Part shown: positions 11,077 through 61,518 of the stretch, one piece after another
Numbering within the stretch: position 1 is the stretch's first letter
Layout: every line of letters starts with the position of its first letter
Origin: Haliotis rubra
Taxonomy: Eukaryota
NCBI RefSeq assembly: GCF_003918875.1
Contig: NW_025767134.1
Coordinates: 806,001-870,000 of the forward strand
Direction of reading: 5' to 3'
Length of the DNA stretch: 64,000 nt
Program-made: the position numbers and the translations under genes
The notes under the pieces: generated by a model
What the model was told of the DNA's origin: nothing
What the model saw: only the letters and a program-made list of their open reading frames with translations
Databases searched by the model: none

Positions 11077-13336
11077 CTAGTCCTTACATGTGTCAGCTTT
11101 TGGACAAAGGTAAGTGGCAGTCACGTTTGACAAGTCACAGTTTTGCTCAATGAATATGATCGAATCCGTTTTCTTTATCAATTCTTGAACCTCTATCGAT
11201 ATAGTCAGGTCACAGTCATCATGGAGTGACTTTGACCTTAAACTATCATCTTTGACATGTTGTGCTATTGCACTCAACAGCGATAACGACGAGGTTGTGT
11301 CAGCTGGTGGTTCTGAAAGGGGTCTCTCGATTACACTTGAGGGTCCACGAAAGATCGCTTGTCCTTCCACTGATAATGGTTTCACGGTTTCATGGTGCTT
11401 TATCCGGAGCTTCACGACTTCGGTGTCAGAGGAACCTGTGTTTGAACACGGCGATGAGGAGTTAATATCTCTGTCGTGTATTTCCCAGTACTTGTGTGTC
11501 CAGTAATCACTGTCGTGGTCATTCCCCGACCTGACTGCATGTTCCGGCTGTGTCCCATCTTCTGGTGGAGATGACCTTGTGGAACCATCTCTGAAAACAG
11601 CCATGACAGTGTGTAGGCTCAAATGCGCATTATGCCCAATGGGAATTGGATTATTTAATAAAATGTATAAATATACGTTTTTGAAATTGTTTTGAAATGT
11701 TGACAGATATATTCATGCGATGAGAACAAGCATTTAATGACACTTATCTGAACTTATCTGACATCGCCAAGTCATAAAACAGTGTTTTGGAACCTGTGAC
11801 ATGATACGGTAGATTTTGTATATAATATTTTTCTCACCTTCCCAAACATTTCGGAAATTGTCGAACGACCAATATGACAATCCCAAGAAGGATAACCATC
11901 GTCAGTATTCCAGTCGTAATTTTAAATGGGAAATTTAGACCTCCTGCAGAAAAGACATAAAACAATAAGACACATTATATAAAATACATTATAGATATGA
12001 ACTTCAGTTAATAGGTTAATATATTATCGTAATGGGTATTTAATCTATCCAATGAAAGCAGTCTCCCCGTCTGAGAAATTTTACTGCTGAAAGGTCGATT
12101 GCATTATATAAATTGTCAGACTCGAGTATATGACTATACTGAATATGACTATGTTAGCACACATTGACGCTGTATGATATCCTGTTGACAATGTATTCAG
12201 TCAGTTCACAAGCCATTTACGGTGTTGTGTTGAAAAGGATCTTTACTTATTACCCATACGGATGAGGAGATCCCCTGTAATATCTTTTGGAGATTTGCAA
12301 AACGTGCACACTTTAGTGATTCTCGACGTTTCGCATTCATAATATTGCATCGATTCATTGATGAATTGACCGTGCTGTAATCGCACTGATTGAGATTTTA
12401 AAATAGTAAAAAAACATACAGGATTTCGATTTGGATGCTTATTTAATGCTTCATTTCATATTTCATTGACAATATGGCGTCGTTTACTTAACATGTTTTG
12501 TAATAAAAAAAAATTCTAATCGTATTTTGTAAACAAACATGGCTACCCAGTTACCGTCAATGACCTGGTCAAGGTGGACGGATGCATTACTGGACGTGGG
12601 ACAGGTAACATCACACTTGTCCCCTGTGTACACCCGGCTCACAGCTGTCACACACTCCCCTGTGTCTTTATCACATCCACCTCTACAGTTAGGGGGACAG
12701 GTAACATCACACTTGTCCCTGCTGTACCCTGTGGCTCACAGCTGTCACACTTCCCTGTGTGATCCTTTATCACATCCACCTCTACAGTTGGGGGGACAGG
12801 TAACATCACACTTGTCCCCTGTGTACCCTGGCTCACAGCTGCCACACTCCCCTGTGTCTTTATCACATCCACCTGTACAGTTGGGGGACAGGTAACATCA
12901 CACTTGTCCCCTGTGTACCCCGGCTCACAGCTGCCACACTCCCCTGTGATCCTATTACATCCACCTGTACAGATGGAGGGACAAGGTGTTCTACAGTGTT
13001 GACCGTAATACTGGGGATTCTGACACGGTCCTGTACAACCATTACCATAACGTTCACACTGTGTACAGGCTGTAGGACAGTTAACTCCACAGTTATCTCC
13101 CTTCTTGCCGGCCACACATCCCTCTGTACACACAACACGGGTGTTGTTCATCTGACAGCGAGAGTTGAGACAGGTGTCTGGACAGTCATGTTGACACTGT
13201 TTACCATAGAACCTGGAGTCCAGACACTGGAGACACTCTCCAGATGACGTCACATTGACACAGCGAGGTGGACACACCACGTCAACACAGGTCACGTTGT
13301 TAACGTCACAATTGCAGGGTGTGCTTTTAGAAGAAA
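11077..13336 (-). CDS. Multi-EGF single-pass receptor gene A (MEGF10/SREC-like); exons 13336-12555, 12385-12254, 11943-11838 (TM), 11590-11077; signal exon not assigned
   Basis: Canonical AG/GT sites with consistent phases 1,1,1,2. Cys-rich repeats CPxNCxGGCDxxTGECxxCEPGYTGDKC; TM ITTGILTMVILLGIVILVV; tail with HKYWEI. Small indels in 93-bp repeats break the frame (real or consensus errors). Confidence 0.8.
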
Positions 13337-14582
13337 CTGTCGAATGGAAAATGAAAATGTAAATGTATGGTATGTGTTCAATGTACAAATTAAACATCTT
13401 CACCGTCAACACAGGTCACATTGTTACCGTCACAGTTGGTGCCAGGAGCTGTGAATTATTTTAAAGCAAACGCTAAGCAACAAAATATTGTTCCTGAATG
13501 TCCGCACATAGTTTACTGAAAACGGCTCTCAATTTAGAAATAATAATACGATACAAAAATGAATAGGATTATTTGATATTATGTACGATAGTTTAGATAT
13601 GTGTGAATGGTGAGCGCCAACGGTAGGGTACACACAGATTTTCATTGCTTCATTCAAATCATGTTCACAGCTATTTTGCCCTTCACATGAAATGGAGTGT
13701 GGTCTGAGGATAGTCAAGACTAGGCATTTCTTTTTGTACTGACGATAACAATTAATGAGGAATGCTAAGAAAACATTAAGTGCATTTAAACCAAACCATC
13801 ACCCTGGTTTTGGTAATGCTCTAATTACATATTTTATCATATTAGTTACATGAAAGTCAAGAAATTGAGCAATATACATTTATACTGACCAAAGTAAACC
13901 GATATAGATATTTTCTGCGCTAGTGTTAATGCGTAAATATAACCCTTTTCTTAACATGCATAACTGCTTTAATGCTGTTGCAAAAACTTCTATTAGAAAT
14001 GTCAAAAGTGGATGAGCGTTTGGGCGGAAACTGCATAGTGATTGCATTCTTTCCAGGTCTTGTTAAAGGAAATCAAACACAATAAGTATCCATTTGAGGC
14101 TTAATGCAGCACCCTGCTTAGAATACAAAAATAAGAATTTCAAGCCAATGCATTTGTTAACTAAAGATAATAAGTTTCAGCAAAATCAATTAAATGCGTC
14201 ATCATGTCACTGGATTTGTTAGTCCATCACGTGATTGTCTGGTTTCACTGCAGGCCACCGTCGTACTGCGCAACACACAACACTTGAACAAGAAACTGTG
14301 CCACCTGAGGGGATTATATGTCAAGCAAGGCCTGCTTACCCTTTCCGCAAACACCTGGGGCGGTATTCTATAAAAGTCTTAAGTCCTTAAAAAGACTTAA
14401 GTCTATGGAAAGTGACTTAAGTTTTTTGAAAAAACTTAAGTTTTGTCTTAAGTCACTTGTTTTTTTCTTAGTCATATTCAATAAAGGTTTTAGACTTAAG
14501 TTTTGTTGTTTTTGGACTTATTTCCTAAGCCTGCATCCATGTAGGCTTAACTATAGGATTTCAACTTAAGTCTGTAACTAAG

Positions 14583-15414: not shown

Positions 15415-15423
15415 GCAAGATTA

Positions 15424-17238: not shown

Positions 17239-19777
17239 CTATTCTTCTAATTTCCTTAATTTTGATTGAAGATAAGTTTTCTGTAACTTTAGAACTTCAA
17301 TCTCCAGTAGAAACTTCTCTCTTTCTAGGACTTCTAAGGAAGTTGTTGATATGGATGTTGCTGCTGATAGTGATGCTGATGCTGCTGATGCTGATGATGA
17401 CTGTCCCACCTGTGATGTAGGATAAGGACATCTCACTCCCTCTTGAACTGGATCTAACTCTCTGAAACACAGATGTAGATTATCAGTATTGTATTCATCA
17501 AAATATATCATTACTTTTTAAATCCTGTTTTCTGTTATTATTTTATCTCTTCAAAGATTTTCAGACAAATATAGAAACAAGGTTTATCTAATTTCTAATT
17601 TCAACTTTAATTTTAGGAATTCAAATGGTCAGGTGTACATGGTCAGGGGAACTCATACAATTGTTTCAATATGTTATTACCTACTTTTCAAAGGACTGAT
17701 CTAGCGCTAGGAGCTGGATGAAACTAGAATCCATGGACATCGGCCCAATCCCTGTCAGCACTGTATTCTCCCGGCCTATACAGTCCACCACAGCTTCTGT
17801 AACTGGGCTAATTGGTGTTGGGGGAGGTCCACCACCTGAAAATATTGTCAGACATTAATTATTGTAATTCTAAAAAATTGTTTTTTTCCACTTAATTGGA
17901 ATTACTCATACTATCTAAACATACGGTAAAGGTCATACGAAACATATTACACAACTCACCCAATGTCATCTGCACATATCATATATAGAAGATTACTATT
18001 TTTCGTAACAAATACCATGTTTACCTCATCAAGCAAGATAGAAATTTGATGTTTTTATGATTTTGCAATGAAGACTCATCTGTGTGATATTTTACATTTT
18101 ACAGTTTTCTGCTGGAAAAAGTTTTAAATAGTTGTATGACAGAAAGTAAATTTGATTTATAACGGAGAGTAAAATTGTTAGGGTCAGTAGCAAAATTTGG
18201 GGTCAGTAGTTAAATCGGAACCCCAAGATTTTTTTTAAGGCCCTAACCCCAATATGTTACCCTCCATAGGACATAAATTACAAAATTTACCGGTTGCAGT
18301 TGTTGCATTCTTGAAAGTGCTGTAATTTTTTTTGCCCGCAGACTTAAGGTTTTTCCATTTCTTTATAACCTCATCTCTGCTTCGTTGCTGTCCAATTGAA
18401 TTGATGGTGTCAGTGATTTTCTAAAACAAAAAGTTGTTAACAACTGGATTAATATCACCTCCTTGATTTGAAAATAACAAATTTTTGTTGGGCATTCTTC
18501 AATTGGAGGATGGAAAACGAAAATTATTTTAATTGATGAAAAACTAATATTTCAGTGCATTTAATGATTTCTCTGTTGATTATTTCAAGTCGGAGGGAAC
18601 AAAGGTAAAAAGGTTGCAAAAAATGTATATAATTACACCTTTAAGGCTTAGTAATTGTGTACCATTAATCATAGATATGTGTATTATAAACTGAAGTAAA
18701 GCCCTTTATTGGATTCCAAAACAGAATGTAGAGAATATTACTGTAAATAAACAATCTTACAAACAGCATCCGTCATATCGTAAGAAGGGCATTGTCTTTG
18801 TTTCAATTCAACTATTTTTTTAAATATAGCAATTCGGAGAGGGTAAAGATACCCACCTACATAAAACACTCAAGGGAATACATCAAGCAAATAAGGATGA
18901 AATACACTATTTTCTTTGCACAGTTTGGGCATACTTCAATACAGGTGTCTCTAGAATAATGGAGCACAACACAGTGACACATTGCTCAGTTCCAGTTTTG
19001 GAGTCACATAACCTATCAGTATTTCCCTCACCTTTTGAAAACAGGGATAAAAAATATTTTAATCATTGTGAAAATGTCAAAATTAGGAATGCTATATTAG
19101 CCATAAAACACGTACTCCATGCGCATCTTTAGCCTACACTTACNNNNNNNNNNNNNNNNNNNNNNNNNNNNNNNNNNNNNNNNNNNNNNNNNNNNNNNNN
19201 NNNNNNNNNNNNNNNNNNNNNNNNNNNNNNNNNNNNNNNNNNNNNNNNNNNNNNNNNNNNNNNNNNNNNNNNNNNNNNNNNNNNNNNNNNNNNNNNNNNN
19301 NGGCTGGTCCACTTGAAACTGTTCTCATCAATAACACTGGCACAGGAATGTGCAATTACATATTTTGCATCAGCCTTGACAACGGTAAAAATTGTCGTTC
19401 ATATCTGATCATGTGTATAATTTCTCCTACAACAGCACAGTGATTCTCTTCGCGAAATTCAAACACTGTAATTCCATTACTTTTGTGAGATAATTTACAT
19501 GAAAGACTCTTTCTGATTGGCATTTTAAACTTCATCTGATCAACTGACTCAGTACTGAATCACACAACATTTTACATGATATAAAATCACTCGAGATTTC
19601 ACTCACTTGCCATGTCTCCTGGCGACTCGTGGCCGTCACTCCCTGGGAAAATTTCCCCTCAATCGTTTGCTTGCTCGCCTTGACGAGATCCGCTAATAGG
19701 AGGCACTCATCCTTCGTCCAGTTTGGCTGCCTTTTCCGTGAACTACCACAACTACCGGCGTTATCAACATCTGTCAT
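17239..19777 (-). CDS. Harbinger Myb/SANT-like DNA-binding protein, 4 exons (19777-19607, 18420-18291, 17835-17685, 17461-17239), 224 aa
   Basis: Spliced frame open: RKRQPNWTKDECLLLADLV...RQETWQ|KITDTINSIG...RSRDEVIKKWKNLKS...TGGGPPP...LEREKFLLEIEVLKLQK coiled coil. All GT-AG, 675 nt in total. Confidence 0.87.
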
Positions 19778-25533: not shown

Positions 25534-26033
25534 NNNNNNNNNNNNNNNNNNNNNNNNNNNNNNNNNNNNNNNNNNNNNNNNNNNNNNNNNNNNNNNNNNN
25601 NNNNNNNNNNNNNNNNNNNNNNNNNNNNNNNNNNNNNNNNNNNNNNNNNNNNNNNNNNNNNNNNNNNNNNNNNNNNNNNNNNNNNNNNNNNNNNNNNNNN
25701 NNNNNNNNNNNNNNNNNNNNNNNNNNNNNNCTGATTCCTGGTTAACTTCTTAGTTTCAACCCGGGAAGCAACACGTAACACACTGCATTGTTTTAGGGGC
25801 AAAACCATTAACGTATACTAGGTACTGACGACTGTATTGCACTCTTTTGTGTGTTATACTGATTTCATGAACTCCTGTAAGTATTCATACATGACCTTCC
25901 CTCTCCGTGGGAAATACAAGCGTTCAAACACAATACATATTGTGAATGACTCATCAACCCCGAACTCCGACCCGGCTGAATTCTGGCTGCAGGAAAAGAC
26001 ACAATAGACTTCTAATTTTGTGACCCATTAGTA

Positions 26034-28263: not shown

Positions 28264-30332
28264 TTATTCATCACCAAGGTCATCATCCGCGTCGCCTGTG
28301 CGCTGTGTTGTTAGATACCTCACCTGTGCATTAGCAGAGGCAGCTATTAATTCCAGTAACTCGAGAGACTCACTGCTTGTCTGCATATCTTCATGTGTAT
28401 CTGTTTGTCCATTAACACCGTGCAACCTCGAGCCTGACATGGGTTCATAGATATGTTCCTGATGCCAGTCTGGTCCGTCTACCACACCTACTTTGTCACC
28501 ATCAGCCATCGCACCTGGAGTATCAATAACCCTTGGTTTAATATCTGGTACAGCATCAATCTCTTCCCTCATCCTGTTCCCTTGGCTCGGCTGTTCATGT
28601 GATGATTCTTTAAGGCAAGCCACCCTCTGTTCAGGTCTGGTGGTCAACAAAACTTGTTCCCTGCAGCCAGTGTCCACGTCCTGATCGTTGATCTCATAGT
28701 ATTTATGCGCCAAATAGGTACTGGATCCACTACCTTCGGCTTGGGTGACTGTTACAGCATCCTGCTGGGACCTGTGTATCAATCAAACGACCACTGAAGC
28801 ATATATTGCTGACCATTTATAGTTAACACTGTCAAATCCTCCACACTGTGCAGGCAAATATGTAATCGGTATTCTTAAGGAAACTTAAAACACCTCATTT
28901 ACCTTCTTCGTTTTTTATAAATCTTCTTAACAGTCTGAAGAGCACCGATCAACAGAAATGTTGACAGGATGGAACACACAATCATCAGGATGTGGACAGT
29001 TTTCAGACCATCTGGTTCCCCTGGTGAGGCTGTGGTGGCATCTGAAACGTTTCATATACTACATTTTACTTTCATATGATAATGACTCTAAAGGACACAG
29101 TGTTTCTAAAGGATGTCAGTGTTTCGCTACATCAATCCAAGTAAAAAAATGTCTTTCAATGTTTTCAAAATGATTTGCATGATAGTATATGAAGCTACGA
29201 CACGTGAAACATGGGTGGTACACGTAGCAAATGTGCCCAAGTCATGTATCAAACAGTGATATACCCTACCCTATGCACTGACAATTGATGGCAGGACAAC
29301 GTTATGCACGATATGTTTGGACAGCAAGAAGAAAGGTAATGCAGATGATATGTAAGAACCTTAGATTTTTGTTCGAAATTTTCTGACATATTCTGCCCTT
29401 ACCTGTGTGACAGTCTTCGCCGTGACATTTTCCATCGTCACACTCGAAGTAGCTCTCATCGCACCGTGTACACGTCTCTTTATGTTCGTCGCATTCTACA
29501 CAAGATTGTGATGAGCAGGTAACATTGCAGAACGTTCCAAGGGAACCTAATATACAGGCACGACATTTCCCTATATCCTTATCACATCCGTCTCTACAGG
29601 TGGATGGACAAGGCGTTCTACAGTGTGGACCGTAATACCGGGGATTCTGACATGGTCCTATGCAATCATCTCCATAACGTTTACACTGTGTACAGGCTGC
29701 ATCACAGTTCGCACCACAGTTGTCTCCCCTTTTGCCAGCAATACATCCCTCTGTACACACAACCAGGCTGTCCGTCTGACAGCGAGAGTTGAGACAGGTG
29801 TCTGGACAGTCATGTTCACACTGTTTACCGTAGAACCTGGAGTCCCGACACTGAAGACACTCTCCAGGTGACGTCAGATTGATACATCGTGGCACACACT
29901 CTCCTTCAACACAAACTCGGTTATCGTCCTCACAGTTGGTACAGAGTCTACTGGAAAACGCACGTGTTGCCACTGTAACGACAAAATGAACACTTGTAAC
30001 ATCTTCTGAGAAGTTTGTCACATTAACATACATGTGAATCAGTAACTGTCGGTCTAAAGATCCTTGTCCACAGGTTAAATATGAGTTACGCAGACACTTA
30101 TATCTTTTTTAAACAATGCATTTTCTGTAACAATTATTATGCCCTGTTTATGATATATACACAAATATATACTTTACATTACCCGATCTGACATACGTTC
30201 CTATTATTAACAGTGTTTACAAATTCACGATTTATGTATAATTGACCTAAATATATAGATATAATCTAAAAGGTATAAACAGGTACCTGTTATCAAGGTC
30301 ACCAGTGTAATCGTCACCGCCAACGTTGCCAT
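28264..30332 (-). CDS. Multi-EGF single-pass receptor gene B, intact, 420 aa; exons 30332-30287, 29972-29403, 29041-28903, 28771-28264
   Basis: Signal MATLAVTITLVTLIT, EGF exon, TM VHILMIVCSILSTFLLIGAL + KKIYKKRRR, tail with HKYYEI and IYEPM. GT-AG with phases 1,1,2; 1263 nt open. Confidence 0.88.
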
Positions 30333-32775
30333 GGTCAACGGTGCGCTGTTGAAAAACAGGCAATACTTGCTTGAAAAGTATATTGACTGTCATTAATACA
30401 ACATTGGTTGCTAATGGTATATATGAAAGGATGAAAAGGTGAATCCTAGCATCAAATTAGAAATACAGAAACGACATGCTATAATAACCTGGAACAACTA
30501 TTACATTTGCTATCTTACCTCGCAGGTGGGTGTAATATTGGTGCATCGCCCACGTGAGTTAACTGTGAGTTCGGAATACTTCCTCTCACTACCCTTGACC
30601 TAGGGCCGTGTGGGTTTTGTTGGAGATCATGGATCAGTTTCATGCACAATGCAAACACACCAGGAAGCATTTTGTGTACGTATGTTTCACCCGATATATC
30701 TCCTTTATACCAATTCGATAGGTGAAGTAAATTACTTTCTACATCATGATTGGAAAGGTAAAGAAAATTATAAGAAGCAAATCGGTGTATTTGATTGTAC
30801 GTTAGAATGGTGAATATGGTTCGCAAACACCTGGTATTATCCGTATCTGGTAGTGATTCAAGAAAAATAAAGCGACCTTTCTATAGTCACAAAGACGCCA
30901 AAATAGGAGTCGTTAGTCCGATCCCGACTACATCATGAGCGTGATGATATCGGGTGTTTGGGAAACGGTGAACGTATCACGATCGGTGGCACTCGTCGTA
31001 AACACAGAAAGAGGCAAGTTGATGGTTTACCTGGAAAACACAGGGTCACTTGTAGTCGTATAGATAACTCGTATGTCAGACTCTGGTGTCATTACCGATT
31101 TCTTGTGATTATGGAAATGGTTTTGTCGCTTTTGTTCCAAGGTCGAGAACGAAAGTTGCTGTCCTCTGTAGGTGCAGCATCATACGTGTCATGAACCAGT
31201 TAGATAGTCAATATACTCAATGTAGCATGTTAATGTTTTTGAATGTGATACACAGGCTAGCTGATTGCTGTGTTCAGTTACAGATTATCAAGTCTCTTGG
31301 GTTGTTTTTTCTAGCGCACAATAAATCAAGATGTAAATAAGGAAGAAGAACCAAACACCAATACAACGGGGAATACAAATACAACAGGCCTTGTTTCCTC
31401 TTATGACAATTTACATTTTAGATTTGTTCCCTTATGTTATACCATACATGAAGTAGCCCAGTGAGTGTTACTGACGACGCAGCCTCGTTATGATGTAAAG
31501 TCTGACCACCTGAAAACGTACTGGTCAGTTTTTGTTGGTGCCGCTCATATATACAACACACCAAATACGACAGAATACCGTACTTGAGAGGGTACATTTA
31601 ATGAAAGATCATTCATCACAAGCTTCTCACTCACACGAATTCAGTGTAAAAACAAAAACAAACTGGTATTATACAAAGAATAATTTCATTAAGACTATAT
31701 TCGGGTTTTACATTAATACAAATGACTTGAAAGTATTTACAATGTTAGTATGTGCAAAAAAAACAATTTACAGTATATTTATAATGTGCGTGTGTGATTC
31801 TTTAAAAACTTGTATTGTGTTTCCCTGCATGACAGTAATTGACGCCATCTTTTGTTTTTAACAAAGCGTTAGGTAAAAAATTACACCTTTTGTACAGACC
31901 ACACATGTTTTTGTCGAGTAGGAGAAAGGTGTATCTCGAAAGGGCTATACTTGCTCCTCCTTGCTAACAACACCTCATATCCATATACTGAGGATTCGAT
32001 AGGGGAAACATTAAATATTCGTTAGAAATTGAAAACAGTTCAACAGGCAGCTTTATTTTATACTGGAAGAATATAATATTAAAACCGAAAAGCAAAGCGC
32101 CTGGTATACTGACACACTGGTGTAATTAAGTCGGGTGGGTAGTTTCCATACAATATCCGTCTAATCACAGTTTTACAGGTGGTGTGTAGTCTTCTGTGTT
32201 TCAGAAAAAAGTGGGTTTCTTAAACAAGCAACTGCAGCCAGGCGGGTAACACGAGATAAAACCTGTTTCCATTTTTCTGATCAATGCTATTGCAAAGTGC
32301 GAGTTTTGGGGAGCAGATAGTGGTACAATCTGTGATGATCGCATTATAATGTCAGTGTCAAAGCAGAATATTACGGAATTTACGGCGATTGGCTTAACTT
32401 ATATAAGGTACAAACACGTATGAAGACCAACGATACACGTATCATCCTTGTCAAACTACGGACATTCATAAGACAGCTAAAACATAGCAAGATTATTTAA
32501 GCCTCCAAGAAAATAACTACATTTAAAAGATATTAAATTCATGTTATTGCACATATTATAAGCAATAGAGTTCAGTGACATTTGGGCTGAAATTCCCTCA
32601 GCCATTCAAGGGTAGGTCCTTGTATTTTTTGTGGTCACAGTTGGCTGATATTGTCCGCAGTATGTTCGGCGCTGTTATCCGTGATATCACTGATTTTTAA
32701 ATCAATTGGGAACTTTAAAAGTAAAATAATGAAAGCCGTAAGTTGCTTTCACATTTACACTCTGTCTAACACATT

Positions 32776-35400
32776 TCAATCGATTAAACTCTCTGTTGAA
32801 CTGGGTGGTGTATTGAAATAGTGGATATGAACACATGGCCTCGTCAGTTCCACAACTGTAATTCCATTGGAGAAGCTGTCTAAACTTCGTTCCAACACAG
32901 GCGCAGTGACGACTTCCTGTTGGTCAGCGCTCCCTGGCGCGTCAGTGGATGTCCCAATGGGATGCGAGCAGCGGATGTCAAGTGTGTTGTAATCTCCGTC
33001 AACAGGTACGGCATCAGCTCCATTGACTTGCATATCAAAGAATGTGTTATCTATGTAGTCATAGGAATGTTCGGAGACGTCTTCTTCTATGTCTGCAGCA
33101 ACAGTCTTAGTCGTGGATCTGAAATAGTTAGTCGTACCTAGGAAACTGGAACAAGTTCAAAATCACAATGAGTCACATTGAGATAACTGATTTTTGCCGA
33201 TTGACCACGTATATATCTAAATGATTGCATAACAGAAGAAAAAAAAACATTCAAGTAAAATACATGTTTCAGGTAATCGCCCTAACCCTTTCACTCATTG
33301 TAACATCTTACTTCGCCCAAACTGAATACAAGTAGTGTTTGCCTTTCCAAACGCCATACCCTTGGAAAGGGAAATAATACATATAATTGAGCCTTTATTG
33401 TCTGTCGACATCACCATACTTTCAAAACTTGTGAACTTCCTGGCAACGGGTATGAATCTACATCAGTTGTGTACTGAATCTTAGACATGAGAAGAGAGCT
33501 CGACCATTTCAGGTCACTGACAGAAGCATCACAAGGTTGTTTTTGAAATATTAACGTTCAATGCTATATACACAGATTGGATATGATATGCAAACAAACC
33601 TCCTCCGATTACGCACAAGCAGTATGGTCACAATCAGCATCACATGGCCTAGGATACCCACTGTTATCACTGTAGGAGTAACTGCATCGTTTCCTAAAAA
33701 CAGATATTTGCAATATACCACATATATACTGCATACTGTTGACTAGAAAACCCAGAAAGCCTTGGTAAATAAAAGTAATTCGTAATTCGATAATTGTTTA
33801 AATAACTGGTCTTTTAACCATTGACGTACTATTACGGATAAGTTGTTTAAATAACTGGTCTGCGTGACAACTTAACCATTGACGTACTATTACCTTTATC
33901 ACATTCAGTATACATCACACTTGTGACAGGAAACATTCGATACACTTGTCCCTTGACTAGAAAACCAAGTTGGCCTTGGAAGGAAACATTACACTTGTCC
34001 CCTATTGTAACCTGGTTTAACCATTGACGCACTCCCCATGCCTTTATCACACCCACCTCTACAGTTGGGGTGACAGGTATTATACACTTGCAATCACACT
34101 TGTCCCCTGTGGTAACCTGGCTCACAGCTTCCACATTCCCTGTGGTACTATCACATCCACCTGTACAGTTGGGGTGACAGGTAACATCACACTTGTCTCC
34201 TGTGTAACCTGGCTCACAGCTGCCACACTCCCCTGTGATCCTATTACATCCACCTGTACAGTTGGAGGGACAAGGTGTTGAGCAGTTGTGACCGTAATAC
34301 TGGGGATTCTCACACGGTCCTGTACAACCTTCACCATAACGTTCACACTGTGTACAGGCTGAAGGACAGGTCACTCCACAGTTATCTCCCTTCTTGCCGG
34401 CCACACATCCCTCTGTACACATAACACTGGTGTTGTTCATCTGACAGCGAGAGTTGAGACAGGTGTCTGGACAGTCATGTTGACACTGTTTACCATAAAA
34501 CCTCGAGTCCAGACACTGGATACACTGTGACGTCACATTGTCACAGCGAGGTAGACATACACCGTCAACACAGGTCACGTTGTTAACGTCACAGTTGCAG
34601 GGTGTGGTTGTAGAAGAAACTGGTAACAAAGATCCGGTCAGATATTACAGACAGTGAGTCTAAAATACGTTTACTCATATTATTGGATAGCAGTCGAAAT
34701 AATATCGATAAAGTCGATACAAGGCATACTTCCAGTTGAAGCTGTAGAGAGGGAAAGATATAGATTGGGATTGCGTTCAACTAACACACCTTGACAAATA
34801 ACCAACAGGGCGTAACACAGTCTACCGCCAAAACACCAACACGTAACACCTACCGCCAACGCACGTCACATATGCTAGAGAGTTGGTGATATGAATGATA
34901 GCTATGGCGAGGGGTATGCTGGGCAAACTGTTGATCTAAAATGTATTTAGTGCAATCTATGTGGATATGGACTATTACTTTGATGTTGGATTATGCAAAT
35001 GTAATATGAAGATGATAATTTTCAGAGAAATCGGATATCGTTACTATCGTGTCTTGCAGTAATGTTTCGCTTCTTTTTACCTTTTAAGGTACCGACAGTC
35101 TAAACCATATCTGAGTTGACTTCATTTGTTGCTTAAATTCAAACTGAATACAGATTTTTTGACATGGCGAGATGAAGCCAAACATTAGTATCCGGAGCAT
35201 ATTTCAATGTCGTTTTAAATGTTTCTAGATATATGAGTCCATGATTAAGTCACATCTGATATGCACTGACATCAATTGTAACTACAGACAATACATCTCA
35301 TCCACAACAAATTCAAGGTTCAGATATACATTTTCTGAGCTTTAACGACATTGTACGCACCTGATGCTACCACAAGGACTATAGCCATGAGGCCCTCCAT
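32776..35400 (-). CDS. Multi-EGF single-pass receptor gene C; exons 35400-35361, 34619-~33900 (3' end scrambled), 33693-33600, 33118-32776
   Basis: Signal MEGLMAIVLVVAS, EGF block, TM VITVGILGHVMLIVTILLV + RNRRR, tail with HSYDYID and DYNTL. Region 33770-34060 is jumbled. Confidence 0.75.
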
Positions 35401-38240: not shown

Positions 38241-38277
38241 GTTCATAAATAAAACATTCAAGATTATACAAGTATGA

Positions 38278-38910: not shown

Positions 38911-39271
38911 ACGTTTTTCCTATGACATTTTTCCGGTCACCCTTCAAGATGGCTACCTGTATGCCAAGAGCAAGGTGAAAGGAGAAAATGATAATGTTCA
39001 AGTGACTTTCTAATAAGAGTCATCTGTGGACTGAGAAACATGTGATGTAAAATAATATGGTGCTTGGTCTCATATGTTTGTTGGTACATGTATATAAATT
39101 ATTGGTTTTGACAATATTCACAAGTAAATGTGGATGTGGCAAATATATGTTAATGTACATATATGTTGATGTAGTACGTCTTAATTTAAAAATCATACTT
39201 CATTACATGAATTGATAAAACTATAGTTAACACCTCCACGTTGTCTTTTTATCTGGGCACATACCATTATT

Positions 39272-41185
39272 ATCACACCCACCCTCTACAGTTGGGGTGG
39301 GCAGGAAACATCCACACTTGTCCCTGTGGCTTACCTGGCTTACAGATTGCCGCATACTCCCCGATGCCTTTATCACACCCACCTCTTACAGGTTGGGGTG
39401 ACAGGAGTACGATGCACTTGTCCCTGTAACCCTGGTTTACAAGATTGCCACACTCCCCGATAACTATCACACGCACCTCTACAGGTTGGGGTGACGAGGA
39501 AACATCCCCACTTGTCCCCTGTGTAACCTGAAACCGCAGCGCTGCCACATCCCTGTGTCTTTATCACATCCACCTGCCAGCGCAGTTGGAGAGGGACCGG
39601 GTATCACTTGTCTCCTGGCAGGTTTTGTGAGAAGGCTTTGGCTCACAGCTGCCCACACTCCTATTGATCCTATTACATCCACCTGTACAGTTGGAGAGGG
39701 ACGAGGTGTTGAACGGTTAATGGCCGTAATACTGGGGATTCTCCACACACGGTCCTGTACAACCTTCACCATAACGTTCACACTGTGTGTACAGGCTGAA
39801 GGACAAGATCACTCCACAGTTATCTCCCTTCTTGCTTGCCGACACACATCCCTCTATACGCATAACACTGGTGTTGTTCATATTCTAGCAGGGATTAGAG
39901 ACAGGTGTCTGGACAGTCATGTGAAAACCTGTTTACCATAAAACCTCAGGTCGAGACACTGGATACACTGTGACGTCACATTGTCACAGCAGGGTGGGCT
40001 TATACCTGCCGTCAACACAAGGTCACGTCATTAACGTCACAGTTGCAGAATTGTGGTTGTAGAAACTGGTAACAAAAGATCCGGGTCAAAGATATTTACA
40101 GACGGTGAGTCTAAAATACGTTTACTCATGTTATTGGATAGCAGTCAGAAATAATATCGATAAAAAGTCGATACAAAGGCATACTTCCAGTTGGGAAGCT
40201 GTAGAGAGGAAGATATAGGTGAGGATTGCGTTCAGCTAACACACCTTGACAAATAATAACAGCGTAACACCTACCGCCAACGCACGTCACATATGCTAGA
40301 GTTGGTGATATGAATCTATTTCTATGGCGAGGCATGCTGGGCAAACTGTTGATCTAAAATGTATTTAGTGCAATCTATGTGGATATGGACTATTACTTTG
40401 ATGTTGGATTATGCAAATGTAATATGAAGATGATAATTTTCAGAGAAATCGGATATCGTTACTATCGTGTCTTGCAGTAATGTTTCGCTTCTTTTTACCT
40501 TTTAAGGTACCGACAGTCTAAACCATATCTGAGTTGACTTCATGTGTTGCTTAAATCCAAACAGAATACAGATTTTTTTAAATGGCGAGATGAAGCCAAA
40601 CATTAGTATCCGGAGCATATTTCAATGTCGTTTTAAATGTTTCTAGATATATGAGTCCATGATTAAGTCACATCTGATATGCACTGACATCAATTGTAAC
40701 TACAGACAATACATCTCATCCACAACAAATTCAAGGTTCAGATATACATTTTCTGAGCTTTAACGACATTGTACGCACCTGATGCTACAACATAGACTAT
40801 AATATGAGGCCCTCCATGAGATGTAAGATCTGAAAAGTAAGTAAAATGAACAATTTATTACACAGATGGCCTTTCTATCGTCAAATGTATGTGGTCTTGC
40901 TCAGGTAGACTCAGCACACGCTATGGCTAACGTGCTTAACGAAACATGAACAACTTGTATGTACGTAACTACTGACCAGACCCTGGTAGTTTTATATCCC
41001 CTCAACTCATATTTACATTAGGGTGGAATATATTGTCTTACAAAATGCTGACTTAACACCAGGTTGATGGCGAGCCAACCTTTTTCTGTTTCGAAGGGAT
41101 ATACATCTAGAAAATCGGCCAAGCTCACCCTGTCTCAATTTACATGGGTAACCTTAACCAGAATTATAATTTTCTACTAAATACA
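39272..41185 (-). pseudogene. Indel-rich duplicate of the gene C 5' half (EGF exon, intron, signal exon)
   Basis: Colinear with ~34045-35821; the intron is partly near-identical, the exon is riddled with 1-2 nt indels. Confidence 0.8.
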
Positions 41186-43968: not shown

Positions 43969-43972
43969 AGGG

Positions 43973-45476: not shown

Positions 45477-45511
<35 letters not shown>

Positions 45512-48307: not shown

Positions 48308-51300
48308 TCATTTTCCCTGGACAGTTTCATCTGGAGTAATGTATTTGACAGTGATATTTGACAAGTCATTGTTTTGCTCTATGAATAGGATTGAACTGGT
48401 CTTTGTAGGGAGCCCCAGGGTGCTTGAAGATACTGGTCTGTCGTGTATATCACAGGAATGTGGTATATACTGATGAGTGGAACCTGATGCAACATCAGTA
48501 GTCATCAATACTGGCATTGATGGTGATCTGGCAAGGTCTTTTATTGGTGAGGATGCAATGTTGGAAACACCTGACATCTCTGACGTAACCAAAGAAGGTT
48601 CATTTCCGCTTGTCATGTGAGAATCCTTATGCGCAGACACAAATGATGACCGGAAGTCACGTGACGTCCCTTGTCCAAGTGACCAGGACCGTGGTTTGGG
48701 TGACTCTTGTCTTGGGTCGTGTTTAGGATGTAATGGAGGAAGAGGGGGTTGTACAGACAGCCTAGGTGGAGAAGGTCCAGGTAGACAAGAATCAGTGTCC
48801 AAGTCCTTGTCGTATATTTCCGAATACTTGTGCGACTGGTAGTCACTGTTGCGTGATTGTCTGGAGCCATTGCTGTCCCATCTTCCACCTCCGGTGTTTG
48901 ATGAGGAGACACACATCAGTCTACAAAACAAAATATACTTCCAATAATGCTTCGCTAAGCTGTAAAGTATACCAATGATTGTTAGTTTGTTACCATTGCA
49001 TTAACATTGTCATTGTATGACGATTGTCAGGTGACATATCTTTCAAAGATTTAGAAACATGCAACAAACTGAAGTTTAAAGAAATTGTTAATTTGTCATA
49101 GAACGCGCTTTAATGCCAGAGAATAACCAGTCTATATTATCTGTGGAAACAGATTCCACCACTGAGTCACCCAGTTTCAATCGGACTTTACTATTTCCTT
49201 CAGCTGGGTACAAAGTGCGCTGTGTACTTGTGGGTGTCATTGGGTGAAGCAATCACATAACCTAATTCTTCGCATTCAAATAAACCAGTGTATTGTGGTA
49301 AGAGAGGAAAATGGAAAATTGTGTTTCAAACTTATAGGTTCTGTAAATTGTTCCGATCATTGTACAGTCTCTGTTCATCACCTACCGGTTTCTCTTGTGT
49401 GCCCAGAAGCCCAGTACCAGTAGCAGTAATGTGGAGGCTCCAGCTATTGTTCCCATGACAATCACCAAAGTGTGGTCAGCGTTCCCTGCAACAACAGTCA
49501 TAATTCAACAGTTTGTTACTGGGTCTCATAGGACATTCTTTGACTCAGTGCTCATCCCATGTACATTTTCAAAGATTAAAATCATTTATATTTTTCTCAA
49601 ACTGCTTTAAATTGAATAAATCACTGTAGGCAGAGAATACATATACATATATCTACACGGGTCAATACAAACTTTAAACACTTCATGACGAGCCTTGGTG
49701 TGTTAGACATGAAAATACTCTAGGGTGAAATTATATTTAATTTCCAAATTAATTCCTCACTTCAGTTCCGTTTGTAAACAGTAACAACACGTATCCCGAA
49801 TGTGCAAAGTACAATTCACCATCGCCATTGGCATATAGACAAGTGATGTCATGGCAACCGATGACGTCGCAGTAGTCTACAAGGCATTTTCATGCACACT
49901 AACTCGGAAGTTATCTCCTTGATAAATAAATCATCCCGTTATACGGAAACAAATAACGTTACATTTACAAAAGGTATATTTACAAGTTTGAATGATCAGT
50001 TTCGATATCGAGCTTTACCATGACTATGACTCACGCTTTTGACAAGGTGACGTGTTGCATGTCTGTCCTGCGCAGGGCGAACATATCTCATCGCAGTACT
50101 TCCGGCTGAAGTTGGTGGCACACTCGATACACAGCCCTGTCTCTCTGTGACAACCATGGCAGTTGACGGGGCAAGGGGTGGCACAATAGTCTCCATGAAA
50201 ATTAGAATTTGAGCAAAGACCGATGCATTGCCCCGAATATCGATCACATACCTTACAGTTTTGATTGCATGATTCATTACAAGACCTACCCCACATCCTT
50301 GGAACGCATTGCATGCACTTCCCTGTTTGTTTGTGACACGTGTCACACTTGGGTGGGCACGAGATGCTGCACATGGCTCCATGATAGTTCTGATTTATGC
50401 ATGGACCGGTACACTGAGACCTACCGATGTCGAAGCTTCTGCAGTTCGGGAGACATGTCTTTTTACACGAAGTACTATCACAATTAGTCATATTCTCGTC
50501 ACACAATCCCAGACAGTACCGTTCAGTACATTTCAGGCAGCCTTCGCCATACTGATCGCAACGTTCACAGTTATCAGGGCAGGAATGATTGCAATATCTA
50601 CCTCTATACCCAGCTTCACAACCATTACAGTATCCTTTGATTGTTGTACATCCATCCTTTAAATTACAGTGAGAGGGACATAGTTTGCTACAATTTGGAC
50701 CGTAATACCGGGCATTGCGACACAACCCTGTACAACTATCACCATAACGTTCACACTGTTTACAGGCTGTTGGGCAGTTCAATCCGCAGTCGCCTCCCCT
50801 TCTACCAGCCACACATCCCTCTGTACACACAACACGGGTGTTGTTCATCTGACAGCGAGAGTTGAGACAGGTGTCTGGACACTCTAAATCGCAGTGTGTT
50901 CCATAGAACCGGGAGTCGACACAGGTCCCGTTGTTGTCACAGTTGGGGCAGACTGTGCTGGTATAAACAACTGTGGATAGTAGAGAGATGTTTGTTGGAT
51001 AGACACACATATACTACCCATCAAAAGTTTAGACTAGTGTAAATGTAGCCACTTACTTCAGTCAACTGTTCCAAACCTAATTTTCAAAATATTCCATTCA
51101 GGTTAAAGGTACTGTTTACACATGAACAAATGAATTGTAAAAACAAATTCGTGACGTTGAAAAAATTATTGTCATGAGTTCAGTAAATGATGAAAATCAG
51201 TGAAAATTGGTGAATGCTTAACAACACTTTTCACCAAAATGCAGCTGTTCACATGAACGATATTTGCATATGCTTGTTAGCAATTTGATGCATGATCCTC

Positions 51301-52453
51301 GTACAGTTCATCTGCATAAAGTTTGCAGTTGGTTCCCCAAAGTTAGTGAAGAAATTCATCTTCGATGTAACCATATATATATACATAACATATAGTGAGT
51401 GCGTTAGGTGAGTCTAAACTTTTGATGGGTAGTATATAAGGAGTAATTGCATTCATACTGGTGGAAAATGGACGTGAATGTTATTGTTAAAGTCCCAATT
51501 AAACAGCTGCAAACAAGATACTAGTATGTATGTTTAAGCCTTTAACAACTATGTAATGAAACCATTCCAGTCTGGGTAGGACAGACCATTGACTGATATT
51601 ATGAGCCATACCGTGGATGACACTTCATCATTCACGCAACGTATGGGTACCAAGACACGCCATCTTTCACACAACCTGACATCCATACCGTATGGGTACC
51701 AAGAGACGCCATCTTTCACACAACCTGACATCCATACCGTATAGAATCCAAGACACGCCCTTTACCGTATACCGACGGGTCCAAGACACGCCATCTTTCA
51801 CACAACCTGACATCCATACCGTATGGGTACCAAGACACGCCATCTTTCACACAACCTGACATCCATACCGTATGGGTACCAAGACACGCCATCTTTCACA
51901 CAACCTGACATCCATACCGTATGGGTACCAAGACACGCCATCTTTCACACAACCTGACATCAATACCGTATGGATTCACGCCATCTTTCACACAACCTGT
52001 ATATGGTACCAAGACACGCCATCTTTCACACAACGTGACATCCATACCGTATGGGTACCAAGAGAAGCCATCTTTCACACAACCTGACATCCATACCGTA
52101 TGGATTCCAAAACAAGCCATCTTTCACACAACCTGACATCCATACCGTATGGTGCCAATACACGCTATCATTCACACAACCTGACATCCATCCATACCGT
52201 ATCGGTGCCAATACACGCCATCATTAACACAACCTGACATCCATCCATACCGTATCGGTGCCAATACACGCTATCATTCACACAACCTGACAACCACCCA
52301 ATGATGCCATTGCCGTTTTCTGGTACGACAAGTATAGGTTGTTCGGGACCTACTCCATCCATTGATTTCTATGTCACATTTACAGAGAGACGTTAAGGAA
52401 TAATTACCTGTTGACATACAGTGTGAAAGGAGAATCACCGCGAGAGACAACAT
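48308..52453 (-). CDS. Multi-EGF single-pass receptor gene D, intact, 564 aa; exons 52453-52408, 50970-50035, 49485-49386, 48920-48308
   Basis: Signal MLSLAVILLSHCMST, 312-codon Cys-rich exon, TM LVIVMGTIAGASTLLLLVLGFWA, tail with HKYSEI and SSILFIEQNNDLSNITVKYI; 1695 nt open after splicing. Confidence 0.9.
51012..51434. mobile_element. Tc1/mariner-type MITE in gene D intron
   Basis: 24-bp perfect TIR TACTACCCATCAAAAGTTTAGACT, TA flanks. Confidence 0.9.
51606..52291. repeat. ~49-bp minisatellite, about 13 units, in gene D intron
   Basis: Unit ATCCATACCGTATGGGTACCAAGACACGCCATCTTTCACACAACCTGAC. Confidence 0.95.
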
Positions 52454-57881: not shown

Positions 57882-60800
57882 TCACATTTCATAAGAAGCA
57901 CTATCTCTGTCAACTTTTTTCGCTGTCAAATATCGGACATTCACGTTTGACAAATCACAGTTCTCTTCAATGAAAATGATCGAATCGGTTCTTTCGGTCA
58001 TCCTTTGGATTTCATCTGAAAACGCGATCCCAGTGTCACTCTGGACAGATTGGCGCTGAGAATCTCTCTCATTCTCAGAAAGGGCTGATGCAGCTAACAG
58101 TGTCAACAAAGACTCTCCTGCATCACCATTTCCTTCTGCAGAATCTATCAGCTCAGAGTCGCTCCCTGCAGGTTCGCCTTGCCCAGGCGTTGGTGGAAGG
58201 GTGTGAGACAACGCAACTGGACCTTGACCATCGGATGGTGCGCTGCCTGCAGTTCTTACTCGGGGTCTGTCTGTAGGAGGTAATGCAGGTCTCACAGACT
58301 CTTCAACATGGTCAGACTGCCCGGCAACCAAGTTGACATCAATCTCCCAGTATCTGTGCGCAATGTTATCGCTGTGGTTCCTGCTGGAGCCATCAGAACA
58401 GTGTACTCGAGTCAAGCGTCTGCAAAGTTGTCATCACGTGTATTAATTAGACTGTATCTCTTCACATTATTACATTGTGTATACTAAGATGAATATAACA
58501 CAAAATAGGTTTATCACATCAGTTATCAAGACAAATGCACTGATATGATTAATGTCAATCTAATACAATATTCATGTCAAGCTTATTGCCTAGACTGATG
58601 CCAAATTGTCCTCTATATTCCTGTCCTGATACCAACTTATCCACGTCCTCCCATATATTCGACAAAAGGAAATATTATAAACAACTCGTTTTTAGCTCAG
58701 GTAGCTCAGCTTCACATGTTTTTACTCAGTCACTCTACAAGAGCATCTCATTATATTCGCCTCTTACTTCTGTCAGCAGTAATTAGTCTTTTCCACAAAT
58801 AATCAATAATTCTGATTAACACGAAGTTACTTATGTATAATGTATGTTCTAAAACTGATACCTACCTCTTGAATATGAGAAGCAATATAACACAGCATAG
58901 AACCCCTGCTACTGATCCAATGGAAATTACTAAGATGTGATCAGACGAACCTGCAAATGGAAGGGCAGTTCGGTAAACCATGACACGGACATTTATAAGG
59001 TGAGAAAGAAATTGAGTTATCGTCCAGCGTAATGTTATCGAACTTTTGTAGCGACACATATGCCTTAAGCAGGTTTTATAAAAGTGCTTGTCTACTACGA
59101 TAACACGCCAGATGTTAACATACTGGGCCAAAACATACTTTACTGATTCCGAGCCGGCCAGGGTGACGTACCAACTACCAGGGGATCGAACCACCTTCCA
59201 CTCTATCTACTACGACACAGAGTTGATCGCATACATATTGTGATTAAAACGTCACCAAACCAGGGTAATTAAACCATAATTCTGATCAAATTGTTCGTAA
59301 ATATATCATATATGTGTGTTGTTTTGAGTGATATTAGCTAATGTCAGGCAATAAAACTGTACTTTCAATCAAGAAGATCACAGAGCATTATACGTTACCA
59401 TTTCAACAATGAAAATATATCTGTCATTCTATTTGTGCCACTTAATTATATTAACTGGCTTCAACCCATAAAATCATTGTTCTATATCCTTGATATTTCA
59501 TTAATGTGAAGGTTTTCAGTTTGTCTATTTGTCAAGACTATCCACTAATAGGCTTTGTCGGTGTTCACTGTTATTGATTACCACACAAGCAGAAACGTCT
59601 TTACATCAAAAGTCTATTCCTGAGCTGGTACCCAGTAAAAGGCTGTCTAAGAATGGTCAAATGTATGAAACTTTCATTAATTGTTTTTCCGGATTATTAT
59701 GGGCTGCAATTGTTATGGATCGAGATGTAGGATATGGAGGAATTCACACAAGCGTCTTTATCGTGAAAATTTATAATTTAATAAACGTATCAACAAGGAA
59801 GACGGTACCTCTTTTCAACCAATTGGAATGAAGCATTCTTCAACCTCGAAAGAATGAATAATAACTGACGCGTTTTGTGTGAAAACGAGTTAATTAAACA
59901 TGTATTAATAGGGAAAAGCTCCCTCTTATTAAACAATCAATATCAAACTTTTTTTCAATGTCGTGCAAGAATGAATAATAACTCACGTGTTTTGCAAGGC
60001 AGTCTGTGGCAAGCGTCCCCAACACACGGAGAACACACCTCGTCACAGTAGGTTCTGCTGTAGCCTTGGACACAGCTCATACACAGTCCAGTGTCCTTGT
60101 CACAACCGTCACAGCTGACAGGGCAAGGAGTCGAGCAATTCCCTCCATGATAGTTAGGATCTCGGCAAGCTCCGATACACATGTCCACAAAACGATCACA
60201 GACCATACAGTTAGATGGGCATGACTCGTTACACAGTTCACCTCTCACACCTGGTACACAGTTGAGGCATCTCGCAGAGTCTTTCTCACATTTGGCACAG
60301 TTATCTGGACATGGAATGGTGCATATCTTTCCATAGTAGTTGGCGTTGATACAAGGTCCATTGCACTGGTTTTGTGTGAAGTCATTAATTATACAGTTTG
60401 CTCGGCATGTTGTTTTACAAGATGTACTGTTACAGTTATCTCCCTGCTCGTCACATCCACCCTTGCAGTACCCTTCAACACAGTGTATACACTCGCCTGT
60501 TTCCCTGTCACAGTCTCTACAGTTGGAGGGACAGGTAATGTTACAGTGCTTCCCTCTGTACCCCGGCTCACAACTGTCACACCCTTTATCACATACCCAA
60601 CTGTCACACTCCCCTGTGATCCCATTACATCCACCTTTACACAGCAGGTGTCACACACTCCCCTCCTGTGATCCTATCACATCCACCTCTACAGTTGGAG
60701 GGACAAGGTGTTCTACAGTGTTGACCGTAATGCTGGGGATTCTGACACGGTCCTGTACAACCATCACCATAACGTTCACACTGTGTACAGGCTGTAGGAC

Positions 60801-61518
60801 AGTTCACTCCACAGTTATCTCCCTTCTTGCCGGCCACACATCCCTCTGTACACACAACACGGGTGTTGTTCATCTGACAGCGAGAGTTGAGACAGGTGTC
60901 TGGACAGTCATGTTGACACTGTTTACCATAGAACCTGGAGTCCAGACACTGGAGACACTCTCCAGATGACGTCACATTGACACAGCGAGGTAGACACACA
61001 CCGTCAACACAGGTCACGTTGTTACGGTCACAGTTGGAACAAGGTGTGCTTGTAGAGGAAACTGTAAACAGTGAGGTGGTTTGCAATATAAATTCTGATA
61101 TTATTGAAAGACATTAAGTCGGACTTAATTTATTTTCCTATTACGATTGAAAGCATTCTGATCAAAACAAGTAACCATTTGTAAAGTGTATTGTTCGGCC
61201 ATTAGCAGGTTCTGTAGTATCTGTTGACAGTCTTGAAATCTGGAATCATATCTCCTGGGTCATCACACTGGTATGTATTCTAATATGCCAAATACATACT
61301 GTGTTTCCGCCAGGAAAACACTCAGTCGTGAAAAACTATCAGTTCAACGACATGTTCATTGGTATGAGAAAAGCATGACACTGTTAACACGAATATACAG
61401 TGAAGATTGTGACGGGGAATGGACTACGACAGTGCATCACGGAACGCATGAATGAAAGACATGTATACAAACCTTGCGATGCAGCCCACAGTAGGATAAG
61501 CCTCAAGACATTAACCAT
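57882..61518 (-). CDS. Multi-EGF single-pass receptor gene E; exons 61518-61473, 61061-59987, 58950-58866, 58419-57882; one frame break at ~60640-60665
   Basis: Signal MVNVLRLILLWAASQ, long Cys-rich exon, TM ILVISIGSVAGVLCCVILLLIF, tail with HRYWEI and TDSIIFIEENCDLSNVNVRYL. The break lies in jumbled 93-bp repeats. Confidence 0.82.

What the first reader, a model, noticed from the sequence alone, without database searches (positions are those of the whole stretch)
12975..60991. Gene-conversion signature confined to the EGF exon
By eye, 12975-13269 (gene A) and 60697-60991 (gene E), 48 kb apart, differ at about 3 of ~295 nt, including synonymous sites, while the adjacent introns share nothing. 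A 34-nt core TCTGACAGCGAGAGTTGAGACAGGTGTCTGGACA (encoding CPDTCLNSRCQ) is identical in all five genes (13151, 29775, 34440, 50848, 60873). Protein-level selection alone would not preserve third positions. Inference: recurrent ectopic conversion nucleated at this core.
Basis: partly seen in the sequence, partly recalled or inferred. Interest (0 to 1): 0.72.

Follow-up and report, generated by a model that had tools for sequence, protein, structure and literature searches.

The report
Gene conversion in abalone receptor family
A cysteine-rich exon segment shared by about 26-29 clustered abalone receptor genes is kept almost identical between genes whose introns are unrelated, most likely by copying between genes, which is a well-known process.

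Summary
A 12975-13269 and E 60697-60991 differ at 3 of 295 nt, their upstream introns do not align, and the 34-nt core is exact at all five places. The window is Haliotis rubra, a tandem cluster of CED-1/MEGF10/SREC-like genes on the minus strand.

The genome holds at least 26-29 copies, and the window has a sixth, decayed copy. The block is not an exon. High identity begins about 25 nt inside a much longer exon and ends inside it. Pfam finds no EGF domain in the block.

Ectopic conversion is supported by tests polarised with orthologues:
- Gene A's introns align with an H. asinina gene, yet its block is 98-99% like H. rubra paralogues and 93% like that orthologue (AU p 0.036).
- Gene D carries a 74-nt master-identical tract that has 9 changes in its H. 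rufescens orthologue.
- Family-wide, species-specific sites exist.

"Nucleation at the core" is not shown. The core is the overlap of independent tracts and the most conserved stretch, also between species.

The 99% figure may be inflated. The assembly is 30x Nanopore polished with Racon and Pilon. Long-read assemblies of two other species show 93-97% between paralogues.

This is a known kind of process, of moderate interest.

The parts
12600..13338 (-). Gene A, large Cys-rich exon. The acceptor is at about 13338/13339 (phase 1). Tandem 96-nt Cys repeats lie downstream, and the frame is lost in the assembly near 12893.
12975..13269 (-). Master-type block in gene A. It is 292/295 identical to E and 98.3-99% identical to four further H. 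rubra loci.
13151..13184 (-). 34-nt core in A, encoding CPDTCLNSRCQ.
11080..11947 (-). Gene A transmembrane and tail exons (11837-11947 and 11080-11601). They were used as the within-gene baseline against the H. asinina orthologue (pS 0.23).
28267..30000 (-). Gene B, which is H. rubra LOC124289769 (P0029). Its block homologue is at 29563-29913 and its core at 29775-29808.
32773..34644 (-). Gene C. Its block is at about 34225-34572 and its core at 34440-34473. The repeats are frameshifted.
39415..41084 (-). Copy F, a decayed duplicate of C. It is 83% identical to C including the flanks, carries many indels, and its core is no longer intact.
48311..51013 (-). Gene D, which is H. rubra PEAR1-like isoform X2 (P0015). 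The large exon is at 50027-50980.
50808..50881 (-). 74-nt tract in gene D that includes the core. It has 0 differences from the H. rubra master sequence and 9 substitutions in D's H. rufescens orthologue. Both flanks share D-specific states with that orthologue.
57924..61134 (-). Gene E. The large exon runs from about 61063 downward. There is an in-frame stop at 60637-60639 after a 72-nt insertion.
60697..60991 (-). Master-type block in gene E. Its core is at 60873-60906.
19144..19301 (.). Assembly gap in the interval between genes A and B. It lies in no compared segment.
25534..25730 (.). Assembly gap about 2.5 kb beyond the 3' end of gene B. It lies in no compared segment.

Best explanation
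The window is part of a tandem cluster in Haliotis rubra. The cluster genes encode single-pass receptors with a Cys-rich ectodomain, named CED-1/MEGF10/SREC/PEAR1-like. Some relatives carry a tyrosine-phosphatase tail.

The first 300-450 nt of the ectodomain exon exist as a 'master' sequence shared by about 20 genes whose introns are unrelated. The best explanation is repeated non-allelic (ectopic) gene conversion. A stretch of one paralogue is copied into another during repair or recombination. The tracts end where similarity falls off, inside the exon on the 5' side and in the variable repeats on the 3' side. More divergent paralogues (B, D, L024) receive short patches of tens to about 110 nt.

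The 34-nt core is the place where these patches overlap and where the protein is most constrained.

Shown: mosaic structure, conflict between block tree and intron orthology, and tracts polarised by orthologues.

Inferred: the molecular mechanism, the direction master-to-recipient, and the idea that high identity at the core favours further exchange.
For: 1. Paralogues with unrelated introns share the block. Blocks of L001-L006 are 98-100% alike, while their upstream introns give no BLAST hit to each other.

2. High identity starts at AACTGTGAC, about 25 nt inside the exon, and not at the splice site.

3. Nine 'class 1' genes share introns at 92-98% identity, but their blocks are less alike (87.5-97%). 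One of them (L005) has a block identical to L003, which belongs to another intron class.

4. Gene A's introns align with the H. asinina gene in L031 at 70-75% identity. A's block is 93.2% like that orthologue and 98.3-99% like H. rubra paralogues.

5. In the block tree, master-type copies group by species: H. asinina with support 90/95 and the Californian species with 91/92. The more divergent paralogues instead group by orthology. The AU test rejects the orthology grouping for A (delta lnL 25.6, p 0.036).

6. There are 5-10 diagnostic sites per species pair, shared by paralogues whose introns do not align.

7. Gene D has a 74-nt tract with 0 differences from master and 9 in its H. rufescens orthologue. 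The rest of D's exon has pS 0.49 against that orthologue.

8. L024 and its H. asinina orthologue carry master-like patches at different positions.

9. The same pattern occurs in long-read assemblies of other species. Blocks are 93.6-96.9% alike in H. cracherodii and 92.9-94.1% alike in H. asinina, with introns that do not align.

10. A run test on 23 copies gives 32 pairs with P<0.01 where 2.5 are expected.
Against: - The run test on the five window genes alone is not significant. The minimum P is 0.025 over 10 pairs, and A-E gives 0.066. PHI on 23 copies gives P 0.098.
- The AU p value is only 0.036.
- The excess of long runs could partly reflect clustered slow sites.
- Master copies of H. 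rubra and the Californian species are as alike between species as within them (mean pS 0.084 in both cases). Conversion inside a genome cannot produce this.
- The H. rubra assembly is 30x Nanopore with Racon and Pilon polishing. Multi-mapping reads could have pulled paralogues towards one consensus.
- Two letters private to A are not seen in short-read contigs.
- No read spans a whole block together with unique flanks.
Confidence: 0.7

Rival explanations
1. Nucleotide-level constraint without conversion. The paralogues are old, and the block, above all the stretch around the core, changes slowly at all codon positions because the DNA or RNA sequence itself is functional.
For: - H. rubra L003 against H. 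cracherodii L032 shows 0 synonymous differences in 48.7 sites over the first 75 codons and 4 in 89 overall. The H. rufescens comparison also gives 4 in 89.
- Orthologous non-coding stretches between H. rubra and H. cracherodii are 67-84% identical.
- Gene D's other exons have pS 0.35-0.49 against the H. rufescens orthologue.
- PTP-domain exons of the best-matching genes are 82-88% identical between the two species.
- The core is 33 of 34 nt identical in H. cracherodii Hc1.
Against: - Recent duplicates (class 1) have blocks more diverged than their introns.
- Orthologues L029/Hc2 have pS 0.61 in the same region.
- Against H. asinina, the block's pS of 0.14-0.15 is not significantly below the baselines of 0.257 for GalT and 0.230 for A's own tail exon.
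- Constraint does not explain grouping by species, diagnostic sites, or the D and L024 tracts.
- Rfam finds no family, and folding energy is ordinary, with z 0.09 and 0.39.
Confidence: 0.15
2. Assembly artefact. Polishing with multi-mapped short reads made truly different paralogue exons look alike.
For: - The assembly used wtdbg and DBG2OLC on about 30x Nanopore data, two Racon rounds and one Pilon round with BWA, plus merging and haplotig purging.
- Frameshifts in A, C and E look like residual long-read errors.
- Six H. rubra loci are 98-100% alike, against 93-97% in long-read assemblies of two other species.
- A's private letters are absent from short-read contigs.
Against: - Cross-mapping already needs exons that are more than about 90-95% alike next to unrelated introns.
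- The same contrast is present in independent assemblies of H. cracherodii and H. asinina.
- Many H. rubra copies still differ by 3-12%.
- The D tract and the species-specific sites are not what a polisher would make.

This rival can explain the last few per cent of identity, but not the phenomenon.
Confidence: 0.1
3. Recent exon shuffling or segmental duplication placed one young exon into different genes, with no ongoing conversion.
For: - The same block heads SREC/MEGF10-like genes and receptor-phosphatase genes.
- Two blocks lie within 1 kb of each other at two loci.
Against: - The first 25 nt of the exon and the splice phase are specific to each gene class, with no sign of an inserted unit.
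- The gene classes predate the split between H. rubra and H. asinina, as shown by orthologous introns.
- Short internal tracts in D and L024 cannot arise by insertion of an exon.
Confidence: 0.05

Closest known systems
Concerted evolution by interlocus gene conversion in tandem gene families (classical cases: globins, MHC, histones). In abalone, concerted evolution of the VERL repeats is discussed in PMC2704960 and PMC3567151.
   Same: Paralogues within a species are more alike than orthologues between species. The flanks are diverged and the genes are mosaics with short tracts.
   Different: Here the homogenised unit is the 5' part of one exon, shared by genes with different tails (scavenger-receptor-like and phosphatase). 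VERL homogenises repeats inside one gene.
MEGF-domain and MEGF-RPTP gene cluster SudRes1 of Biomphalaria sudanica (PMC12297450)
   Same: It is a gastropod cluster of paralogous single-pass receptors with Cys-rich MEGF-type ectodomains, some with PTP tails. Haplotypes there are highly variable.
   Different: No galactose-binding domain was detected here. No link to resistance or immunity was tested. Homology between the two clusters was not examined.
CED-1 / MEGF10 / SREC (scavenger receptor class F) / PEAR1 family
   Same: NCBI names the Haliotis relatives this way. The proteins have repeated CxCxxGYxGxxC-type units and a single transmembrane helix.
   Different: Pfam gives only sub-threshold EGF_laminin (18.9 bits against a cutoff of 21) and EGF_TEN hits, and nothing for the block. 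No EMI domain was found.

Membership tests
Interlocus gene conversion / concerted evolution | In the affected segment, paralogues within a species are closer than orthologues between species. | tested here: met
   A's block is 98.3-99% like H. rubra paralogues and 93.2% like its intron-defined H. asinina orthologue. Master-type copies form species clades with support 90/95 and 91/92. AU p is 0.036.
Interlocus gene conversion / concerted evolution | Flanking sequence records an older divergence than the segment. | tested here: met
   Introns of A, E, L003, L004 and L005 do not align, while their blocks are 98-100% alike.
Interlocus gene conversion / concerted evolution | Discrete tracts with breakpoints, more than chance would give. 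| tested here: inconclusive
   Polarised tracts are seen in D and L024. The run test on 23 copies shows an excess. It is not significant on the five window genes, and PHI gives P 0.098.
Interlocus gene conversion / concerted evolution | The sequences are real at each locus (reads spanning the block and unique flanks). | not testable with these tools
   Only k-mer contigs of public runs were available, and none spans the block with its flanks.
EGF-like domain (Pfam EGF families) | The block scores above the curated Pfam cutoff. | tested here: not met
   No Pfam family matched either block translation except a chance Zn_clus hit. The downstream repeats reach 18.9 bits for EGF_laminin, below the cutoff of 21.
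CED-1/MEGF10/SREC receptors | N-terminal EMI domain, multiple EGF-like repeats, one transmembrane helix, and cytoplasmic signalling motifs. | tested here: inconclusive
   Cys-rich repeats and a hydrophobic helix are visible in P0015. No EMI hit was found. Cytoplasmic motifs were not examined. The family names are those of NCBI.
MEGF-type receptor protein tyrosine phosphatases | The same ectodomain joined to a PTP catalytic domain. | tested here: met
   This holds for relatives outside the window, not for the window genes. P0016 matches Y_phosphatase at 8e-83 and carries the block. L003 encodes the ectodomain of the H. rubra RPTP alpha-like protein P0025.

The most novel reading that the evidence does not exclude
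The master block is held almost unchanged at synonymous sites across abalone species, while amino-acid changes sweep through the whole family. All five sites that separate H. rubra from the Californian species family-wide are non-synonymous, and net synonymous divergence is about zero. This would mean either a nucleotide-level function of the exon, or selection on sequence identity itself as a substrate for exchange, together with conversion-driven adaptive sweeps.
Probability: 0.2. Interest if true: 0.6.

Novelty: new member of a known kind. Interest (0 to 1): 0.35.

Why it matters
The cluster shows how a gastropod receptor family keeps a common N-terminal module while its stalks and tails diverge. 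The family is of a type linked to parasite resistance in a snail (PMC12297450).

For annotation and population work it is a warning. Paralogue exons in this Nanopore/Pilon assembly cannot be trusted at the level of single letters, and short reads will cross-map between them.

The low synonymous divergence between species would be the more interesting part if it holds against a proper genome-wide baseline.

Tried and rejected
- Rfam on 12500-13500 found nothing.
- RNA folding of the block on both strands gave z 0.09 and 0.39.
- The core has no match in viral contigs, so a viral or mobile origin has no support.
- Pfam on the block found nothing.
- The Sawyer-type run test on the five window genes was not significant, and PHI was not significant.
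- The antisense codon-aligned frame is open over the block. This follows from the absence of TTA, CTA and TCA codons, and I did not take it as a gene.
- Depth in the laid contigs was not used as a copy number, as the tool warns.
- I could not get a non-family baseline gene for H. rubra against the Californian species. GalT relatives were found only in H. asinina. A search with an intron-bearing stretch was swamped by an interspersed repeat. P0018 is not on record. The tail of P0010 is not orthologous to A's tail.
Exons were searched one by one or through database proteins.
- Assembly gaps were left as they are.
Full report
**What is there.**
- The 34-mer is exact at the five stated places and at no other place in the window.
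- A 12975-13269 and E 60697-60991 differ at three positions.
- All genes lie on the minus strand.
- Family proteins map six loci: A 11080-13403, B 28267-30000, C 32773-34644, a decayed copy F at about 39333-41084, D 48311-51013 and E 57924-61134.
- The two N runs named in the finding lie between A and the 3' end of B. No family exon is detected between 13403 and 28267. They therefore affect only the stated distance, not any comparison. I did not fill them.

**Which organism.**
- H. rubra proteins P0015 and P0029 are encoded by genes D and B at 99-100% identity.
- The genome has 1,378,282,171 bases in 2855 contigs. The published H. rubra assembly has 1,378,265,264 bp in 2854 scaffolds.
- That assembly was built from about 30x Nanopore reads plus Illumina reads, with Racon and Pilon polishing, merging of assemblies, RNA-guided scaffolding and haplotig purging.

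**The block is not an exon.**
- The exon starts at a phase-1 acceptor, at about 13338 in A and about 61063 in E. It runs for several hundred to 1600 nt through Cys-rich repeats of about 96 nt.
- The first 25 nt or so of the exon are specific to each intron class. High identity begins at AACTGTGAC.
- Between A and E the identity runs as follows: intron 41.8% (random), first 69 exon nt 87%, block 99.0%, next 40 nt 81.6%, then random.
- Pfam gives no hit for the block, and only a sub-threshold EGF_laminin hit in the repeats.
- NCBI names the relatives CED-1-like, MEGF10/11, SREC-like, PEAR1-like and receptor-type tyrosine phosphatase. The phosphatase members carry the same block.

**Size of the family.** The genome holds 29 matches to the block on contigs C2244 (680-921 kb), C2260 and C2454. 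The core is exact in 17 copies and within 2 mismatches in 26.

**Evidence for conversion within H. rubra.**
- Upstream introns fall into classes that do not align with each other. Even so, the blocks of L001-L006, which come from at least five classes, are 98-100% alike.
- Nine genes share one intron class at 92-98% identity but have blocks that are only 87.5-97% alike. One of them, L005, has a block identical to that of L003 from another class.
- This mosaic is not what duplication followed by divergence gives.

**Evidence from other species.** I fetched loci from H. cracherodii, H. rufescens and H. asinina.
- Gene A's upstream and downstream introns align with the H. asinina gene in L031 at 70-75% identity. 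Within H. rubra they align only with A's duplicate L007/L020, apart from short stretches of L006 and L015.
- A's block is nevertheless 93.2% like that orthologue and 98.3-99% like the paralogues E and L003-L006.
- In a maximum-likelihood tree of the block, divergent paralogues group by orthology across species. Master-type copies group by species: H. asinina with support 90/95 and the Californian species with 91/92.
- Forcing A, L007 and the H. asinina orthologue together costs 25.6 log-likelihood units (AU p 0.036).
- Five to ten sites per species pair are fixed across paralogues whose introns do not align.
- Gene D is identical to the H. rubra master over 74 nt (50808-50881). Its H. rufescens orthologue has nine substitutions there. 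On both sides of the tract, D and its orthologue share states that differ from master.
- L024 and its H. asinina orthologue carry master-like patches in different places.

**The core.**
- Its 5' end is D's breakpoint and its 3' end is B's first difference. The 34 nt are therefore the overlap of separate identity runs.
- It sits in the most conserved 100 nt or so of the block in all paralogues.
- It is 33 of 34 nt identical in H. cracherodii Hc1, which is the syntenic orthologue of L022.
- It has synonymous changes in L027, L029, Hc2, the H. asinina orthologue of B, and the H. rufescens orthologue of D.
- That tracts tend to include it is shown. That they start there is not. A reasonable inference is that strong protein constraint keeps identity high there, and that this favours heteroduplex formation.

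**Statistics that did not support the claim.**
- The run test on the five window genes gave a minimum P of 0.025 over ten pairs, and 0.066 for A-E.
- PHI on 23 copies gave P 0.098.
- On 23 copies, 32 pairs had P<0.01 where 2.5 are expected. These pairs are not independent, and clustered slow sites could contribute.

**Assembly caveat.**
- Public runs are available only as k-mer contigs. They confirm the master sequence in the source sample, in a second species and in a probable RNA run.
- None of these contigs bridges a block with unique flanks.
- At 13043 and 13083 every contig shows the master letter, not A's letter. Contig building drops minor branches, so this does not prove an error.
- Frameshifts in A (a run of five C where the other repeats have six, near 12893), in C and in E may be errors or real decay.
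- In long-read assemblies of other species, paralogues with introns that do not align have blocks 93.6-96.9% alike in H. cracherodii and 92.9-94.1% alike in H. asinina.
- The contrast between exon and intron is therefore real. The 99-100% seen in H. rubra may be partly made by polishing.

**An unexplained point.**
- Master copies of H. rubra and the Californian species are as alike between species as within them at synonymous sites (mean pS 0.084 in both cases). The five family-wide differences between them are all non-synonymous.
- L003 against H. cracherodii L032 has 4 synonymous differences in 89 sites.
- The other data for these species pairs are far more diverged:
  - non-coding orthologous stretches are 67-84% identical;
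  - D's other exons have pS 0.35-0.49;
  - PTP-domain exons are 82-88% identical.
- Against H. asinina, where clean baselines exist (GalT pS 0.257; A's tail exon 0.230), the block's pS of 0.14-0.15 is not significantly lower.
- Recent duplicates show no slow-down in the block.
- I could not obtain a non-family baseline for the Californian species, so this remains open.

**Comparison with what is known.**
- Conversion among tandem paralogues is a textbook process. In abalone it is discussed for the VERL repeats.
- Clusters of MEGF-type receptors and MEGF-RPTPs are described at a schistosome-resistance locus of a snail.
- This is a new example of a known kind.

Noticed in passing
It is 83% identical to C 33992-35694 over 1.7 kb including non-coding flanks. 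It has many frameshifts and a broken core.
   Followed up: partly
window 20693-21492: A tandem array with a 99-nt period whose copies are about 94-95% alike. It lies between the two assembly gaps.
   Followed up: no
window 37947-39275 and 42945-43968: A duplicated non-coding segment at 92-95% identity, with internal repeats of about 160 nt. Further tandem arrays lie at 9046-9427 and 51608-52309.
   Followed up: no
window 12893 (A), 60637-60639 (E); gene C repeats: Reading frames break in the Cys repeats. A has a run of five C where the other repeats have six. E has a 72-nt insertion and then a stop. These may be decay or residual Nanopore errors.
   Followed up: partly
window 13043 and 13083: Two letters private to A, which account for two of the three A/E differences. 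No short-read contig of the source sample shows them, and all contigs read the master letter.
   Followed up: partly
G000:C2244:752341/753120 and 795797/796213 (L006/L008, L007/L020): Two copies of the block lie within 0.4-0.8 kb of each other. In L007/L020 both sit in one 330-codon open frame, which indicates duplication of the module inside the gene.
   Followed up: no
L003 (G000:C2244:729563), L032, L033: The same N-terminal block heads receptor-type tyrosine-phosphatase genes as well as scavenger-receptor-like genes. The module is shared across gene architectures.
   Followed up: partly
master-type blocks, alignment: All five sites that separate H. rubra from the Californian species across the family are at codon positions 1 or 2. 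Five of the six sites that separate H. rubra from H. asinina are at position 3.
   Followed up: no
L032:22878-23135 (intron of the H. cracherodii RPTP gene): An interspersed repeat with over 18,000 first-look candidates in the H. rubra genome at 87-90% identity.
   Followed up: no
G000:C2260:785724-786338 (L039): A beta-1,3-galactosyltransferase gene flanks the cluster in both H. rubra and H. asinina (94% nt identity, pS 0.257). C2260 is therefore the syntenic start of the cluster and not merely a haplotig of C2244.
   Followed up: partly
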